A stretch of DNA of 63,741 nucleotides, filler included, from Octopus bimaculoides (Eukaryota), in assembly GCF_001194135.2 (NCBI RefSeq). It is 7 parts of 6 records of this genome, joined end to end, with 100 filler letters (N's around TTAATTAATTAA, not from the genome) between each part and the next. Parts side by side here need not be neighbours in the genome. Positions count along the whole stretch, not along the records: positions 55,824 to 60,748 come from NC_069010.1; 6 more parts are not named here. The stretch is one strand, 5' to 3'. Shown here piece by piece: positions 5,800 to 60,879 of the stretch; position 1 is the first letter of the stretch, and the number at the start of each line of letters is the position of its first letter. Under the pieces are notes generated by a model, which was not told where the DNA came from, did not search any database, and worked only from the letters and a program-made list of their open reading frames with translations. The translations under genes were made by a program, and so were the position numbers.

Positions 5800-6141
5800 C
5801 ACATANNNNNNNNNNNNNNNNNNNNNNNNNNNNNNNNNNNNNNNNNNNNNNNNNNNNNNNNNNNNNNNNNNNNNNNNNNNNNNNNNNNNNNNNNNNNNNN
5901 NNNNNNNNNNNNNNNNNNNNNNNNNNNNNNNNNNNNNNNNNNNNNNNNNNNNNNNNNNNNNNNNNNNNNNNNNNNNNNNNNNNNNNNNNNNNNNNNNNNN
6001 NNNNNNNNNNNNNNNNNNNNNNNNNNNNNNNNNNNNNNNNNNNNNNNNNNNNNNNNNNNNNNNNNNNNNNNNNNNNNNNNNNNNNNNNNNNNNNNNNNNN
6101 NNNNNNNNNNNNNNNNNNNNNNNNNNNNNNNNNNNNNNNNN

Positions 6142-9940: not shown

Positions 9941-10047
9941 GTGTGTACGTGTATATGTGTGTATATATAGTTATGTATATATATATATTATATATAGAGT
10001 GAGCATGTTTGTACACACATATAGACGTATATATATAGGCGTGTATA

Positions 10048-10081
<34 letters not shown>

Positions 10082-10240
10082 GTGTGTATATATATATATA
10101 TACACACACACAATCACACGTGTGTGAATATGTGAGTATATATGTGTGTGCACGAATATACATGTACGTGTCAGGGTGTGTGTGTGTGTGGTGGTGGTGG
10201 GGAGAAATCTACATGTAGATACGTGCATAGACATACACAC
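9790..10240. repeat. (TA)n/(TG)n compound microsatellite field
   Basis: Direct inspection. Confidence 0.95.
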
Positions 10241-56236: not shown

Positions 56237-57541
56237 CTAGTGCAGTGAGAACACATGGGAATGACATTTCCTTACTTTTTCAAATATACCCAAATTTAAA
56301 ATGATCTAACATAACGATGTCATTCATTCAACATGTGTTGAAATATGCCAAAACAATTTAATTCCACACAAATATGTTACTTTACATATAATTTATGTGT
56401 TAATTCTATTTACTGAAATTTGTTAAAAAACATATTTTATTTTAAAGTAGTATCACCTTATAGACACAATTTCCAGTAATCGTACTGTTTCCATTTCTCT
56501 CGGCCAATATTCTTACATTAGCCTTCTTTCAAACTCTAGATAATGCAACATAGAGCTGACCACGTGAGAAGAATTGTGTTGAAAGATATATTCCAATTTG
56601 TTCAAAAGTCTGTCCCTGTGCCTTGTTACATGTCAAGGCAAAAGCTGGCTTGACAGGAAATTGTCTGCATGTAAATGTAAATGAAAATTCCATTTCTTGA
56701 GACACATGTGGTATTCTTGGGATTAGCAGAATTGATCCTACCTAAGGACCAGAAGCAACCTCAGCCTCAATAACATGATCATGTCAACTGACAATGATGT
56801 AGTGTGTGCCATTGCAATGTCCATTAGTAGCATCTAAATTTCTCAGAAGCATTATGCATCGTTTTTTCTTCAGTTTGAATGTGTGAATGTGTGGTGGAAA
56901 CCCTGATGGTGTAAGTTTGTTGATGAACTTGATTGAGTACAGGGCTGCATTATCAACTGTATCTGAGCTTCTGTATATTTTTAGCTCACCAGGGATCCTG
57001 GTCAACAGAAAATCATTCATAAATTGAGCTGCTTCGTTTGTTGGAGTAACGATGGTTCTATTTGCATGCTACACGGTTCGTGAAGTTATTTTTTAGATCT
57101 GAAAGAGAGCCACTTTCAAGGCAAGAATCATTGGGTAGTTTGATTTTGAATTCACCTAGGCTTCGTTCAGCAGAAATGTTACCGTTTCCTACATCAAGAA
57201 GGTAATCAGCAAACTCTCTTTCATCAGAATGACCTTCTGTAAGATGTCTTAGATTGGTTGTCGACTCCACTACTTTCGCATAATCGCAAAAAAAAAAGAT
57301 CTCTTTAGTCTTGCATCAACAATTTGTGATCTGATACAATTATTCTGAAGTAGAATATTCTCCTCTCGAGATACCCTAACCAGTCAGTCATGTGTAGCAG
57401 AAACGGAATCATGTCTACGTTTCTGTGCATATTCAGGTTTCTATTTCAGTCGTATTGTCTTGGTTTCATCTGATTCAGTTGCCCGTCTTTCTTTCTGCCT
57501 TTGTGCCTTTGCTGCTAAATTTTCTTTTTCAGTCACATCTG
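56237..57541 (-). mobile_element. Helitron, internally deleted
   Basis: Rep-Hel N-terminal charged repeat joined to a Pif1 helicase C-terminus; putative 3' end cccatgtgttctcactgcaCTAG (decayed hairpin plus CTAG) at 56237. Confidence 0.85.
56442..57345 (-). pseudogene. Helitron Pif1-type helicase C-terminal half
   Basis: TTNLR...FADYLLDVGNG...IVTPTNEAA..MN...YRSSD...LTPSGFPPH...KKKRCIMLLRNLDATNGHCNGT...LIPRI...RQFPVKPAFALTCNKAQGQTFEQIGIYL...FSRGQLYVALSRV*...CVYKVILL*. Confidence 0.95.
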
Positions 57542-57806
57542 TATATATAAATGAAAGCTCGTTAAAAACTATCTTGTTTAGCATGCTAGAAATAGCAGCG
57601 ATCACATAGTCATTATTATAAGGCTTACCAACAAAATCACTTCTTCATTTAGAAAACAAAAATTATACCGGTATATCAAAGAATTTTCATTTTATCAAAA
57701 ATATTCATTTAACAAACTCTGGAAACTGCTAATATTCTTGAAATTTTGCCTTATATCAAAGTTATACAGCTATTTTCTGTAAACAGGAAATGAAAAAAAC
57801 CATATA

Positions 57807-57975: not shown

Positions 57976-59268
57976 TGTATATCATCATCATCATCACCGT
58001 NNNNNNNNNNNNNNNNNNNNNNNNNNNNNNNNNNNNNNNNNNNNNNNNNNNNNNNNNNNNNNNNNNNNNNNNNNNNNNNNNNNNNNNNNNNNNNNNNNNN
58101 NNNNNNNNNNNNNNNNNNNNNNNNNNNNNNNNNNNNNNNNNNNNNNNNNNNNNNNNNNNNNNNNNNNNNNNNNNNNNNNNNNNNNNNNNNNNNNNNNNNN
58201 NNNNNNNNNNNNNNNNNNNNNNNNNNNNNNNNNNNNNNNNNNNNNNNNNNNNNNNNNNNNNNNNNNNNNNNNNNNNNNNNNNNNNNNNNNNNNNNNNNNN
58301 NNNNNNNNNNNNNNNNNNNNNNNNNNNNNNNNNNNNNNNNNNNNNNNNNNNNNNNNNNNNNNNNNNNNNNNNNNNNNNNNNNNNNNNNNNNNNNNNNNNN
58401 NNNNNNNNNNNNNNNNNNNNNNNNNNNNNNNNNNNNNNNNNNNNNNNNNNNNNNNNNNNNNNNNNNNNNNNNNNNNNNNNNNNNNNNNNNNNNNNNNNNN
58501 NNNNNNNNNNNNNNNNNNNNNNNNNNNNNNNNNNNNNNNNNNNNNNNNNNNNNNNNNNNNNNNNNNNNNNNNNNNNNNNNNNNNNNNNNNNNNNNNNNNN
58601 NNNNNNNNNNNNNNNNNNNNNNNNNNNNNNNNNNNNNNNNNNNNNNNNNNNNNNNNNNNNNNNNNNNNNNNNNNNNNNNNNNNNNNNNNNNNNNNNNNNN
58701 NNNNNNNNNNNNNNNNNNNNNNNNNNNNNNNNNNNNNNNNNNNNNNNNNNNNNNNNNNNNNNNNNNNNNNNNNNNNNNNNNNNNNNNNNNNNNNNNNNNN
58801 NNNNNNNNNNNNNNNNNNNNNNNNNNNNNNNNNNNNNNNNNNNNNNNNNNNNNNNNNNNNNNNNNNNNNNNNNNNNNNNNNNNNNNNNNNNNNNNNNNNN
58901 NNNNNNNNNNNNNNNNNNNNNNNNNNNNNNNNNNNNNNNNNNNNNNNNNNAAAGAGAGTATATAAAAAACTATCTTGTTTAGCGTGCTAGAAATAGCAGC
59001 GATCACATAGTTATTATCGTAAGGCTTATAGCGTTCCAAGTAGCCATACCAACAAAATCACTTCTTCGTTTAAAAAAAAAAAATTATGCCGGTGTATTAA
59101 AAATTTTTTATTTTATCAAACATATTCATTTAACAAACTCTGGAAGCTGATAATATTCTGTACAATTTTAATATCACAGATCCCTATGGATCACACAAGT
59201 TGTAATCCTTTGAAACATATGTAGGAATAAAGTATGCAATTATAACATGCGTTTTCTCCATTCCTTAA

Positions 59269-59307
<39 letters not shown>

Positions 59308-59428
59308 CATACATACGCATAAGTATTTATATACTATATATACATACACATATATGTATTTATACATATCATATATATACACCTTTATATTATACAAAAA
59401 TTGATAAAAGAAGAGGGAATGAACAAGC

Positions 59429-59679: not shown

Positions 59680-59850
59680 TCAATTTTTTTTCCTCCGTGT
59701 TTTTCTCCTTGTCTCCGTATTCTTTCTGTTGAAGAGCGTAGCTCGAAACGTCAAAGACTTTCCGTATTCCCGAGCGTCATACTAATATATACTTTTGTTA
59801 TTTACACCACCTGTCCTCGTCTGTTGTTATTATTTGTATATTCTCCCATA
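59680..59850 (+). mobile_element. Penelope-like terminal repeat P1, copy 2
   Basis: Colinear with 48700-48880; ends in (TA)n; carries a hammerhead-like motif. Confidence 0.78.
59721..59757 (+). ncRNA. Minimal type-I hammerhead-like motif with a CUGUUGA core
   Basis: TCTTT-CTGTTGA-A-GAGC gta GCTC-GAAAC-GTC-AAAGA: helix I 5 bp, helix II 4 bp, palindromic ACGU helix III, GUC site. Confidence 0.7.
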
Positions 59851-60028
59851 TATATACATATATATATATAGAGAGACATAATGAATATATATAATATATA
59901 TGTATATATATATACACACACAGTTGTATTCATACATTTTCACACACATAGATATATATACACACGCACATTGATAAGTGCTATGCAAGTTTTCCCGTTG
60001 TTACAGAGATGGCAGTCACCGGTTCCAA

Positions 60029-60169
60029 TCACCGATATTTCTTGCGTTCAAGTTTAGCAACGGTCTGCAAGTGAACTTCATCTGGTCCATCAGCGAGACG
60101 GAGGATTCTTGCCCAGGCATACATGGAAGCGAGAGGTAAGTCAGAATTGAGTCCTGCACCACCATGGAT
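60029..60169 (-). CDS. ACAD10: Acyl-CoA dehydrogenase family member 10/11, terminal exon
   Basis: Strong acceptor ttctttgtttttcattgtctttag|, phase 0, [46 protein letters not shown]. The HGGAG..D.PLA...[13 protein letters not shown] motif is diagnostic; GL.SD.PLA and W-A-R favour ACAD10 over ACAD11. Confidence 0.93.
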
Positions 60170-60284
60170 CTAAAGACAATGAAAAACAAAGAATTAGTCA
60201 GGGCACAAAAACAACAGAAACAAATAGACATTTCCCATGCTAGAAATAGCAGCCAAAGCTTCCCTCAATCACACCCTAACCACA

Positions 60285-60431: not shown

Positions 60432-60590
60432 GTTCAGTTCTATATTTAAGATATGAGGAATTATGTACATTATTTACAATTGATGGATATTTGTCCTCAT
60501 CTTGTTTGTTGTTAACACAACGTTTCGGCTGATATACCCTCCAGCCTTCATCAGGTGTCTTGGGGAAATTTCAAACCTGGGTTCTCATTC
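60432..60590 (-). mobile_element. Penelope-like terminal repeat P2
   Basis: Carries a canonical minimal hammerhead; abuts a (CA)n microsatellite. Confidence 0.75.
60514..60559 (-). ncRNA. Minimal type-I hammerhead ribozyme, canonical core
   Basis: GACAC-CTGATGA-A-GGCTG gagggtatat CAGCC-GAAAC-GTT-GTGTT: helix I 5 bp (one G-U), helix II 5 bp, palindromic helix III, predicted cut between 60519 and 60518. Confidence 0.85.
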
Positions 60591-60879
60591 ACACACACAC
60601 ACACACACACACACATATAGAGTTTATTCTTAAACAAGAATATCGGTGACAGTATCCTCGAATTTTCAGCCAGTTAAGTTATCATCGCACTCAGCTATAT
60701 AACTATTAAAATACACACATTTATATAATTGCTATACGAGGGTATGCTNNNNNNNNNNNNNNNNNNNNNNNNNNNNNNNNNNNNNNNNNNNNTTAATTAA
60801 TTAANNNNNNNNNNNNNNNNNNNNNNNNNNNNNNNNNNNNNNNNNNNNATATATATATATATATATATACATATATACA

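What the first reader, a model, noticed from the sequence alone, without database searches (positions are those of the whole stretch)
60514..60559. Canonical minimal hammerhead ribozyme in sense orientation in the last intron of ACAD10/11
Seen: intact CUGAUGA and GAAA core, 5-bp helix II, 5-bp helix I and a GUU site, on the same strand as the ACAD exon about 350 nt upstream of its 3' splice site. Known: Penelope-like repeats encode such minimal hammerheads, which cleave poorly as monomers because helix III (ACGU) has no loop; intronic self-cleaving ribozymes are known in vertebrates and can affect splicing. Inference: co-transcriptional or trans-dimer cleavage, with another P2 copy in the same or another RNA, could modulate last-intron splicing of a metabolic gene. 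It may equally be an inert insertion.
Basis: partly seen in the sequence, partly recalled or inferred. Interest (0 to 1): 0.75.

Follow-up and report, generated by a model that had tools for sequence, protein, structure and literature searches.

The report
Lone transposon hammerhead in ACAD intron
The hammerhead ribozyme motif is real and intact, but it is a single copy from a repeated mobile element that landed in the last intron of an ACAD10/11-like gene, and on its own it most likely does nothing for that gene.

Summary
The motif exists exactly where reported, on the minus strand (60559->60514), the same strand as the last coding exon of an ACAD10/11-like gene. It lies about 345 nt upstream of that exon's 3' splice site.

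It has every hallmark of the minimal, helix-III-less hammerheads of Penelope-like elements:
- an intact CUGAUGA/GAAA core
- an extra unpaired A between A9 and G10.1
- a G10.1-C11.1 pair
- an ACGU palindrome in place of helix III
- a GUU cleavage site

It is not a chance match. It sits in a 156-bp repeat unit (60590-60435) that is 91% identical to a copy in Octopus sinensis. Homologous units form 114-129-nt tandem arrays in another assembly of unknown organism. Across subfamilies the hammerhead is the best-conserved part of the unit, and two stem pairs covary.

The window copy is solitary. A covariance model finds no partner in the 4.9 kb available. The lone RNA is predicted to fold into an inactive hairpin, and a trans double hammerhead is predicted to be less stable than two monomers.

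Most likely it is an inert retroelement insertion: a new member of a known kind. A role in splicing of the host gene is unsupported.

The parts
60514..60559 (-). Minimal type-I hammerhead motif with helix I open and no helix III loop. Predicted cleavage is after U17, between 60519 and 60518.
   Evidence: Sequence read. It is the only descriptor hit in the piece and the only strong hit of covariance model R1 (92.8 bits).
60555..60559 (-). Helix I, 5' strand (GACAC). It pairs with 60514-60518 (GUGUU).
   Evidence: The third pair (C-G) becomes U-A in the L020 subfamily.
60547..60554 (-). Catalytic core C3-A9 (CUGAUGA, 60554-60548) plus the extra unpaired A (60547) before G10.1.
   Evidence: [quoted passage not shown] U7 is A in the O. 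sinensis paralogue, and position 7 is the free position of the core.
60527..60546 (-). Helix II (GGCUGG / UCAGCC, with G10.1-C11.1) and its 8-nt loop 2.
   Evidence: Pairing probability is about 0.8 within the 156-nt unit. The fourth pair is U-A here and C-G in the units from the ENA assembly.
60519..60526 (-). G12 A13 A14, the ACGU palindrome (A15.1 C15.2 G16.2 U16.1) that stands in for helix III, and U17.
   Evidence: A palindromic 15.2-16.2 is a hallmark of PLE min-HHRs (PMC4209133).
60435..60590 (-). The repeat unit that carries the hammerhead, about 1.25 units long. The 33-nt leader resembles the end of a unit, and one full unit of about 123 nt follows.
   Evidence: 91% identical over 156 nt to O. 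sinensis L004 9999-10154. Homologous along its length to tandem units in L005, L006 and L020.
60590..60615 (.). (CA)n/(GT)n microsatellite directly at the 5' edge of the unit. It is the likely insertion target. 60590 is shared with the unit's 5' edge.
   Evidence: Both O. sinensis copies also abut a microsatellite, (AAT)n. An insertion bias of PLEs for microsatellites is reported in PMC8557442.
60285..60432 (-). The 3' part of an abundant octopus SINE. The hammerhead unit sits between this SINE's internal (GT)n and its 3' part.
   Evidence: BLAST and alignment to three SINE copies in L004.
60472..60477 (-). GTAAAT inside the unit. In the O. sinensis paralogue the same position reads GTAAGT and is annotated as a splice donor.
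60029..60169 (-). Last coding exon of the ACAD10/11-like gene with its stop codon. The 3' splice site AG is at 60170-60171.

Best explanation
This is an intact but solitary minimal hammerhead. It is carried by a 156-bp copy (about 1.25 units) of a short, non-autonomous, hammerhead-bearing retroelement of the Penelope-like / retrozyme kind. The copy inserted at a (GT)n microsatellite inside an older SINE, in sense orientation, in the last intron of an ACAD10/11-like gene.

The ribozyme serves the element, not the host. In transcripts that carry two or more tandem units, two motifs pair through their ACGU palindromes and swap their helix I strands. This forms a double hammerhead that cuts after GUU and releases unit-length RNA for retrotransposition, possibly through circular RNA. 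A lone copy cannot build helix III. This copy therefore most likely does not cleave and is a neutral passenger in the intron.

Shown here: the motif and its hallmarks; repeat membership; tandem and inverted arrangements in relatives; preferential conservation of the hammerhead; no partner in the 4.9 kb available.

Inferred: dimer-dependent cleavage (from the literature), mobilisation by a Penelope-like element, and inertness in this intron.
For: - The motif carries all four non-descriptor hallmarks listed for PLE min-HHRs in PMC4209133.
- A 91%-identical 156-nt copy lies in O. sinensis (L004 9999-10154), with only U7->A and one loop change inside the hammerhead. A third copy there carries a 28-nt deletion of the 5' half.
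- A further copy is annotated as an O. bimaculoides peptide (P0010).
- 92 ORF translations of homologous units were found, many as tandem repeats of about 43 aa. A consensus query found 3488.
- Tandem arrays of 129 nt x 2.7-2.8 copies occur in L005 and L006, and three units about 114 nt apart in L020. Adjacent inverted copies occur in L005, L006 and L021. This matches the tandem/inverted architecture described for PLEs (PMC8557442).
- The hammerhead is the best-conserved part of the unit: 78-83% identity against 31-45% for the rest when compared with the ENA subfamilies (Fisher p=1e-5 and 8e-9).
- Two stem pairs change on both sides, and 83% of cells are paired against 11-47% when the 3' partners are slid.
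- There is no partner in the piece: the next-best hit of the covariance model scores 14.7 bits in AT-rich sequence.
- The monomer's minimum-energy fold pairs G5-G8 with C15.2-U17. Helix I has probability 0.001 in the context of the full unit. The double hammerhead is predicted at -22.3 against -25.2 kcal/mol for two monomers.
- Intronic copies of related retrozymes are common, 42-44% in Xenopus.
Against: - No RT/GIY-YIG ORF lies near any copy I could fetch; the nearby reverse transcriptases are APE-type LINEs. The link to Penelope-like elements therefore rests on motif architecture and insertion style only.
- The piece ends 189 nt upstream of the motif, so most of the intron is unseen and could hold a partner.
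- The helix II covariation (U-A against C-G) can arise from CpG decay at two sites. The peptide-level association tests were either not significant or biased by my own query.
- Only 8 distinct DNA copies were aligned.
- There is no biochemical or RNA-seq evidence.
- Nearest-neighbour energies ignore tertiary contacts and protein chaperones.
- The copy keeps both CpGs of the core region intact. This fits a young insertion but would also fit constraint.
Confidence: 0.8

Rival explanations
1. The hammerhead is a working cis-regulator of the host gene. It cleaves the pre-mRNA in the last intron, together with a second copy in the same intron or with abundant family transcripts in trans, and so tunes ACAD10/11 3'-end processing or splicing.
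For: - Sense orientation, with all core nucleotides and both core-region CpGs intact.
- It lies only about 345 nt from the 3' splice site.
- The family is abundant, so trans partners with matching helix I could exist.
- The unseen part of the intron could hold a partner.
Against: - There is no partner in the 4.9 kb available.
- The trans dimer is predicted to be less stable than two monomers, and the monomer folds into an inactive form.
- Min-HHRs cleave weakly even as dimers (PMC4209133).
- Slow intronic hammerheads did not disturb splicing (PMC2995048).
- A paralogous copy sits at an unrelated locus, which fits random insertion.
Confidence: 0.04
2. The carrier is a Pol III-transcribed, tRNA-derived SINE with a hammerhead, like Sm-alpha of schistosomes, rather than a derivative of a Penelope-like element.
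For: - The leader contains AGGTTCGAAAT (L004) / AGGTTTGAAAT (window), which resembles a B box.
- The unit is SINE-sized and lacks an ORF.
- SINE-like hammerhead carriers are known (PMC6765202).
Against: - ARAGORN finds no tRNA-like structure next to the L004 copies.
- No A box is present, and the sequence directly upstream is a microsatellite in all three octopus copies.
- The same 'B-box-like' stretch is simply the end of the preceding unit in the tandem arrays.
- The helix-III-less architecture with the extra nucleotide is the PLE type, whereas Sm-alpha has a canonical type-I hammerhead (PMC4209133).
Confidence: 0.12
3. The motif is a chance match to the hammerhead consensus, or the conserved block is really a protein-coding exon, as annotated at the start of O. 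sinensis LOC115224785.
For: - Rfam models do not recognise it.
- The O. sinensis paralogue is annotated as coding (MRTQVRNFPKTPEEGWRVYQPKRC...).
Against: - About 4e-4 chance hits are expected in the piece.
- Homologous copies keep the core and stems.
- The window copy has a stop codon five codons after the equivalent ATG.
- Relatives are translated in different frames and as tandem repeats (P0083, P0011).
- The O. vulgaris orthologue of that protein lacks this N-terminus.
Confidence: 0.02

Closest known systems
Minimal hammerheads (min-HHR) of Penelope-like elements (Cervera & De la Pena 2014, PMC4209133; Lunse et al. 2017, cited in PMC6765202)
   Same: - Type-I topology with no helix III loop and a palindromic ACGU.
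[quoted passage not shown]
- A short helix I and a longer helix II.
- Mostly dispersed single copies, with tandem or inverted pairs at some loci.
- Copies sit next to microsatellites.
- Cleavage is expected only as a dimer.
   Different: No RT/GIY-YIG ORF was found next to any fetched copy. The carrier here is a unit of about 125 nt that also forms short tandem arrays on its own. Helix II has 6 pairs, against 7-8 in the schistosome families.
Non-LTR retrozymes of animals (Cervera & de la Pena 2020, PMC7229834; Li et al. 2026 preprint, 10.64898/2026.07.22.740005)
   Same: - Short non-coding units, each with one type-I hammerhead.
- Found as monomers, dimers and multimers.
- Proposed to derive from PLE terminal repeats.
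- Many copies lie in introns.
   Different: The published units are about 170-400 nt and carry canonical hammerheads with loop-loop contacts. Here the units are 114-129 nt and carry the minimal variant. The window holds only about 1.25 units. Circular RNA was not tested.
Sm-alpha / Sj-alpha SINE-like hammerhead elements of schistosomes
   Same: A SINE-sized, non-coding, highly repeated carrier of a type-I hammerhead.
   Different: Those have a Pol III promoter region and a canonical hammerhead with a helix III. Neither was found here.
Conserved intronic hammerheads of amniotes (HH9, HH10; De la Pena & Garcia-Robles 2010)
   Same: A sense-oriented hammerhead inside an intron of a protein-coding gene.
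   Different: Those are single-locus, deeply conserved, complete hammerheads that are active as monomers. This one is a repeat-family copy lacking helix III, with no Rfam match and with orthologous conservation untested.

Membership tests
PLE-type minimal hammerhead (min-HHR) | Hammerhead core C3 U4 G5 A6 N7 G8 A9 ... G12 A13 A14, an A15.1/U16.1 pair, and H17 that is not G | tested here: met
   CUGAUGA at 60554-60548, GAA at 60526-60524, A 60523, U 60520 and U17 60519.
PLE-type minimal hammerhead (min-HHR) | [quoted passage not shown] | tested here: met
   A at 60547; G 60546 pairs with C 60527. The feature is listed in PMC4209133.
PLE-type minimal hammerhead (min-HHR) | No helix III loop, palindromic 15.2-16.2 | tested here: met
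   ACGU at 60523-60520.
PLE-type minimal hammerhead (min-HHR) | Belongs to a multi-copy consensus family with compensatory changes | tested here: met
   Copies in O. sinensis, O. bimaculoides, Logan contigs and an ENA assembly. Two pairs change on both sides. Caveats: few DNA copies were aligned, and CpG decay could explain one of the two pairs.
PLE-type minimal hammerhead (min-HHR) | Lies in the terminal repeat of an element that encodes RT plus a GIY-YIG endonuclease | tested here: inconclusive
   No such ORF lies within 10 kb of the copies in L004, L005, L006 or L020. The piece ends 189 nt upstream of the motif. Most published min-HHRs are likewise single copies away from full elements.
PLE-type minimal hammerhead (min-HHR) | Self-cleavage, as a dimer | not testable with these tools
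   Only energy models were available: double hammerhead -22.3 against -25.2 kcal/mol for two monomers.
Non-LTR retrozyme | Head-to-tail tandem repeats of a short unit, each with a type-I hammerhead | tested here: inconclusive
   Met in the relatives: 129 nt x 2.7-2.8 copies in L005 and L006, and three units about 114 nt apart in L020. Not met in the window, which holds about 1.25 units and one hammerhead.
Non-LTR retrozyme | Canonical hammerhead with loop 1 / loop 2 contacts, and a unit of about 170-400 nt | tested here: not met
   This is the minimal variant with helix I open. Units are 114-129 nt.
Non-LTR retrozyme | Expressed as small circular RNAs | not testable with these tools
   No transcriptome data could be reached.
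Rfam hammerhead families (RF00163, RF00008, RF02275, RF02276, RF02277) | A match to a curated covariance model | tested here: not met
   cmscan of the piece at E<=10 lists no hammerhead family. This is expected, because those models require a closed helix III.
Conserved intronic hammerheads (HH9/HH10 type) | Conservation at the orthologous intron across species | not tested
   The ACAD exon search returned only non-cephalopod exon fragments, and exact look-ups failed. No orthologous intron could be fetched.
Sm-alpha-like SINE with hammerhead | A tRNA-like head with Pol III A and B boxes upstream of the hammerhead | tested here: inconclusive
   ARAGORN found nothing next to the L004 copies. There is only a B-box-like GGTTCGAA, which equals the end of the preceding unit in tandem arrays.

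The most novel reading that the evidence does not exclude
The lone sense-strand hammerhead is cut in vivo. Cutting would depend either on a second family copy further upstream in the same intron, or on abundant trans transcripts of this very small (114-129 nt) retrozyme-like family, possibly circular RNAs. A retroelement family would then impose ribozyme-mediated control on the last intron of a lipid-catabolism gene in octopus.
Probability: 0.03. Interest if true: 0.65.

Novelty: new member of a known kind. Interest (0 to 1): 0.2.

Why it matters
As a finding about ACAD10/11 it matters little. Intronic single copies of hammerhead-bearing retroelements are common in animals, and this one lacks what it needs to cut.

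It has modest value as annotation. Cephalopods carry a family of PLE-type minimal hammerheads that none of the papers my searches returned describes. Its units are unusually short (about 125 nt). It targets microsatellites, and one copy is annotated as the first coding exon of an O. sinensis gene.

If the tandem forms proved to give circular RNAs, they would be among the smallest retrozyme-like circles known.

Tried and rejected
- **Rfam scan.** cmscan of the piece at E<=10 gave no hammerhead hit, only sub-threshold miRNA-like hits on (TA)n/(CA)n low complexity.
- **Orthologous intron.** The 46-aa exon peptide returned five short exon fragments from metagenome and Logan contigs. They match only in the exon and carry no hammerhead. 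Exact look-ups of the exon ORF and of the ORF across the motif found nothing.
- **Metagenome DNA scans.** The unit leader gave 0 hits. The helix I + core + helix II pattern gave 13 hits, 12 of them in high-GC sequence (51-70% GC) and one in a 37%-GC contig. None is followed by the rest of the hammerhead, so all look like chance matches.
- **Search for a Penelope-like ORF near the copies.** Only APE-type LINE reverse transcriptases and a Pif1 helicase were found.
- **tRNA-like head.** ARAGORN found none.
- **Peptide-level test of the helix II covariation (W/Q against R/R codons).** The odds ratio was 2.3 and not significant. A larger set gave 4.25 with p=6e-4. I discount the second result because my query contained both variants, and because both changes are CpG transitions.
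- **Window copy against the O. sinensis copy.** The hammerhead is less diverged (2/46) than the rest (19/120, including a few flank bases), but not significantly so (p=0.07).
- **Organism of ENA assembly ERZ21867824.** It could not be identified, and it shares almost no other repeats with octopus.
- **Lunse et al. 2017.** The paper could not be opened and is cited only through PMC6765202.

Full report
**1. The observation**

On the minus strand, 60559->60514 reads GACAC-CUGAUGA-A-GGCUGG-AGGGUAUA-UCAGCC-GAAA-CGU-U|GUGUU. Its features are:
- a 5-bp helix I with one G-U pair
- the full CUGAUGA box
- a helix II of five Watson-Crick pairs plus a closing G-U
- GAAA
- an ACGU palindrome where helix III should be

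An extra unpaired A (60547) separates A9 from G10.1.

The same strand carries the last coding exon of an acyl-CoA dehydrogenase.
- After a pyrimidine tract and AG (60171-60170), 60169-60032 encodes [46 protein letters not shown], followed by TGA.
- The peptide matches the end of Pfam Acyl-CoA_dh_1.
- Its best match among solved structures is ACAD11, residues 726-767 of 778 (E=1.4e-13).

The motif is therefore in sense orientation, 344 nt upstream of the 3' splice site of the last intron.

**2. Chance**

- The bare core pattern occurs twice in the piece against 0.02 expected. The other match, 57184-57227, has no helices.
- A descriptor that also demands helices I and II, U16.1 and H17 finds only this site.
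- In 60 Mb of composition-matched random sequence, the same descriptor with position 7 left free hit 3 times. That is about 4e-4 expected for the piece. A strict descriptor with all features of this motif hit 0 times.
- No Rfam hammerhead model matches, even at E<=10. This is expected for a motif without a closed helix III.

**3. What kind of hammerhead**

Cervera & De la Pena (PMC4209133) defined minimal hammerheads in the terminal repeats of Penelope-like elements (PLEs). They listed features that emerged beyond their search descriptor:
- a conserved G10.1-C11.1 pair
- a palindromic 15.2-16.2
- a short helix I of 4-5 bp
- a longer helix II

All of these are present here.

They also reported that most copies are dispersed single motifs. 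Single motifs showed no detectable cleavage, and dimers or trimers cleaved only weakly.

**4. It is part of a repeat**

No eukaryotic genome collection was available, so I translated the region in six frames and searched the protein collections.
- The minus-frame peptide across the motif (NFPKTPDEGWRVYQPKRCVNN...) matched the N-terminus of Octopus sinensis LOC115224785.
- The genomic locus L004 holds a copy at 9999-10154 that is 91% identical to window 60590-60435.
- Inside the hammerhead that copy differs only at U7->A and at one loop-2 base. Position 7 is the free position of the core.
- A third copy (L004, about 6090-5960, minus strand) has a 28-nt deletion. It removes the helix I 5' strand, the CUGAUGA box and half of helix II.
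- All three copies start at the same base, directly after a microsatellite: (GT)n in the window and (AAT)n in L004.
- In the window, the unit lies between the internal (GT)n and the 3' part of an abundant octopus SINE.

An insertion bias for microsatellites, tandem and inverted arrangements, and hammerheads near 3' ends are all described for PLEs (PMC8557442).

**5. The wider family**

- A sensitive search with the 45-aa translation found 92 ORF products. One is an O. bimaculoides entry.
- Many of these products are tandem repeats of about 43 aa, in which PEEG = CCUGAAGAAGG and PKRC = CCGAAACGUUGU.
- A consensus query found 3488 such ORFs, nearly all from ENA assemblies; the three loci I fetched come from one assembly, ERZ21867824, whose organism I could not identify.
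- DNA fetched for three of them shows 129-nt arrays of 2.7-2.8 copies in L005 and L006 and three units about 114 nt apart in L020.
- Adjacent inverted copies are present in L005 and L006.
- Logan contigs carry decayed octopus-type copies, including a head-to-head inverted pair.
- Aligning whole units shows that the window element is about 1.25 units long. Its 33-nt leader corresponds to the end of a unit.

**6. Evidence that the hammerhead itself is what is kept**

- Between the window copy and the ENA subfamilies, the 46-nt motif is 78-83% identical. The rest of the unit is 31-45% identical (p=1e-5 and 8e-9).
- On ten aligned motifs, 83% of cells are paired, against 11-47% when the 3' partners are slid by 1-3 columns.
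- Two pairs change on both sides: helix I pair 3 (C-G <-> U-A) and helix II pair 4 (U-A <-> C-G).
- The helix II change could come from CpG decay at two sites. My peptide-level tests of it are weak or biased, so I give it little weight.
- The helix I change is not a CpG change.

**7. Is this copy likely to work?**

- Covariance model R1, built from the aligned motifs, scores the site at 92.8 bits. It finds nothing else in the piece above 14.7 bits, and that hit (59810-59872) lies in AT-rich sequence downstream of the stop codon. BLAST of the piece against itself agrees.
- The lone 46-mer's minimum-energy fold keeps helices I and II but pairs G5-G8 with C15.2-U17 (-12.6 kcal/mol, z=-1.9).
- In the 156-nt unit, helix II is likely (p about 0.8) but helix I is not (p about 0.001).
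- A double hammerhead of two identical copies has swapped helix I strands and a 4-bp ACGU/ACGU helix III. It evaluates at -22.3 kcal/mol, against -25.2 for two separate monomers.
- Published work found that a slowly cleaving hammerhead in an intron leaves splicing intact, and only a fast ribozyme abolishes it (Dye 2006 and Fong 2009, as summarised in PMC2995048).
- In Xenopus, 42-44% of related retrozyme copies lie in introns, so the location is ordinary.

**8. Limits**

- I found no RT/GIY-YIG ORF near any copy. 'PLE-derived' therefore rests on motif architecture and insertion style. A SINE-like carrier remains possible, though no tRNA-like head was detected.
- The piece ends 189 nt upstream of the motif, so the rest of the intron is unseen.
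- Orthologous introns could not be fetched.
- No cleavage or expression data exist here.

**9. Verdict**

The identification as a PLE-type minimal hammerhead is supported. The proposed host function is unsupported. The most likely reading is an inert single retroelement copy: a new member of a known kind and of low interest for the host gene. It has a small side value as the first description I could find of this short hammerhead repeat family in cephalopods.

Noticed in passing
L004 10001-10113 (O. sinensis CM016884.1): A paralogous hammerhead unit is annotated as the first coding exon of LOC115224785 isoforms X1-X3. The ATG is at the start of the unit and the donor ATT|GTAAGT lies inside it, so an intact minimal hammerhead would sit in the coding mRNA. 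The O. vulgaris orthologue has a different N-terminus.
   Followed up: partly
L005 10030-10379, L006 10154-10516, L020 10161-10471 (ENA ERZ21867824, organism unknown): These are tandem arrays of homologous hammerhead units, 129 nt and about 114 nt long with 2.7-3 copies, and an inverted copy lies next to the L005 and L006 arrays. More than 3,400 ORF calls across ENA assemblies translate such units. The units are shorter than published animal retrozymes.
   Followed up: partly
window 60489-60513 and the same block in all relatives: A block of about 25 nt just 3' of the hammerhead (AACAACAAACAAGATGAGGAC...) is 68-88% conserved across subfamilies, nearly as well as the ribozyme itself. Its function is unknown.
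   Followed up: no
L004 about 5960-6090, minus strand: This copy of the unit has a clean 28-nt deletion that removes the helix I 5' strand, the CUGAUGA box and half of helix II. It is a dead hammerhead in an otherwise recognisable unit.
   Followed up: yes
window 56529-57270, minus strand: Broken ORFs here match the Pif1 2B domain and a UvrD-like helicase C-terminus. They are probably a Helitron-type helicase remnant downstream of the ACAD gene. An intact-looking Pif1 ORF also occurs in L004 22660-23745.
   Followed up: partly
window 58001-58950, with 57564-57747 and 58965-59169: A 950-N assembly gap is flanked by direct repeats that are 81-94% identical. This may be a tandem duplication, or a collapsed repeat at the gap.
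   Followed up: no
window 59262-59359 and 59880-59971: Sub-threshold Rfam hits to mir-297, mir-466 and mir-3149 fall on (TA)n/(CA)n low-complexity sequence, far below the gathering scores. I treated them as chance matches.
   Followed up: no
P0030 (Homalodisca vitripennis KAG8331152.1): This insect hypothetical protein is made of 51-aa tandem repeats containing TTEEGW. It was picked up weakly by the hammerhead-unit peptide. I did not check whether it translates another hammerhead repeat.
   Followed up: no
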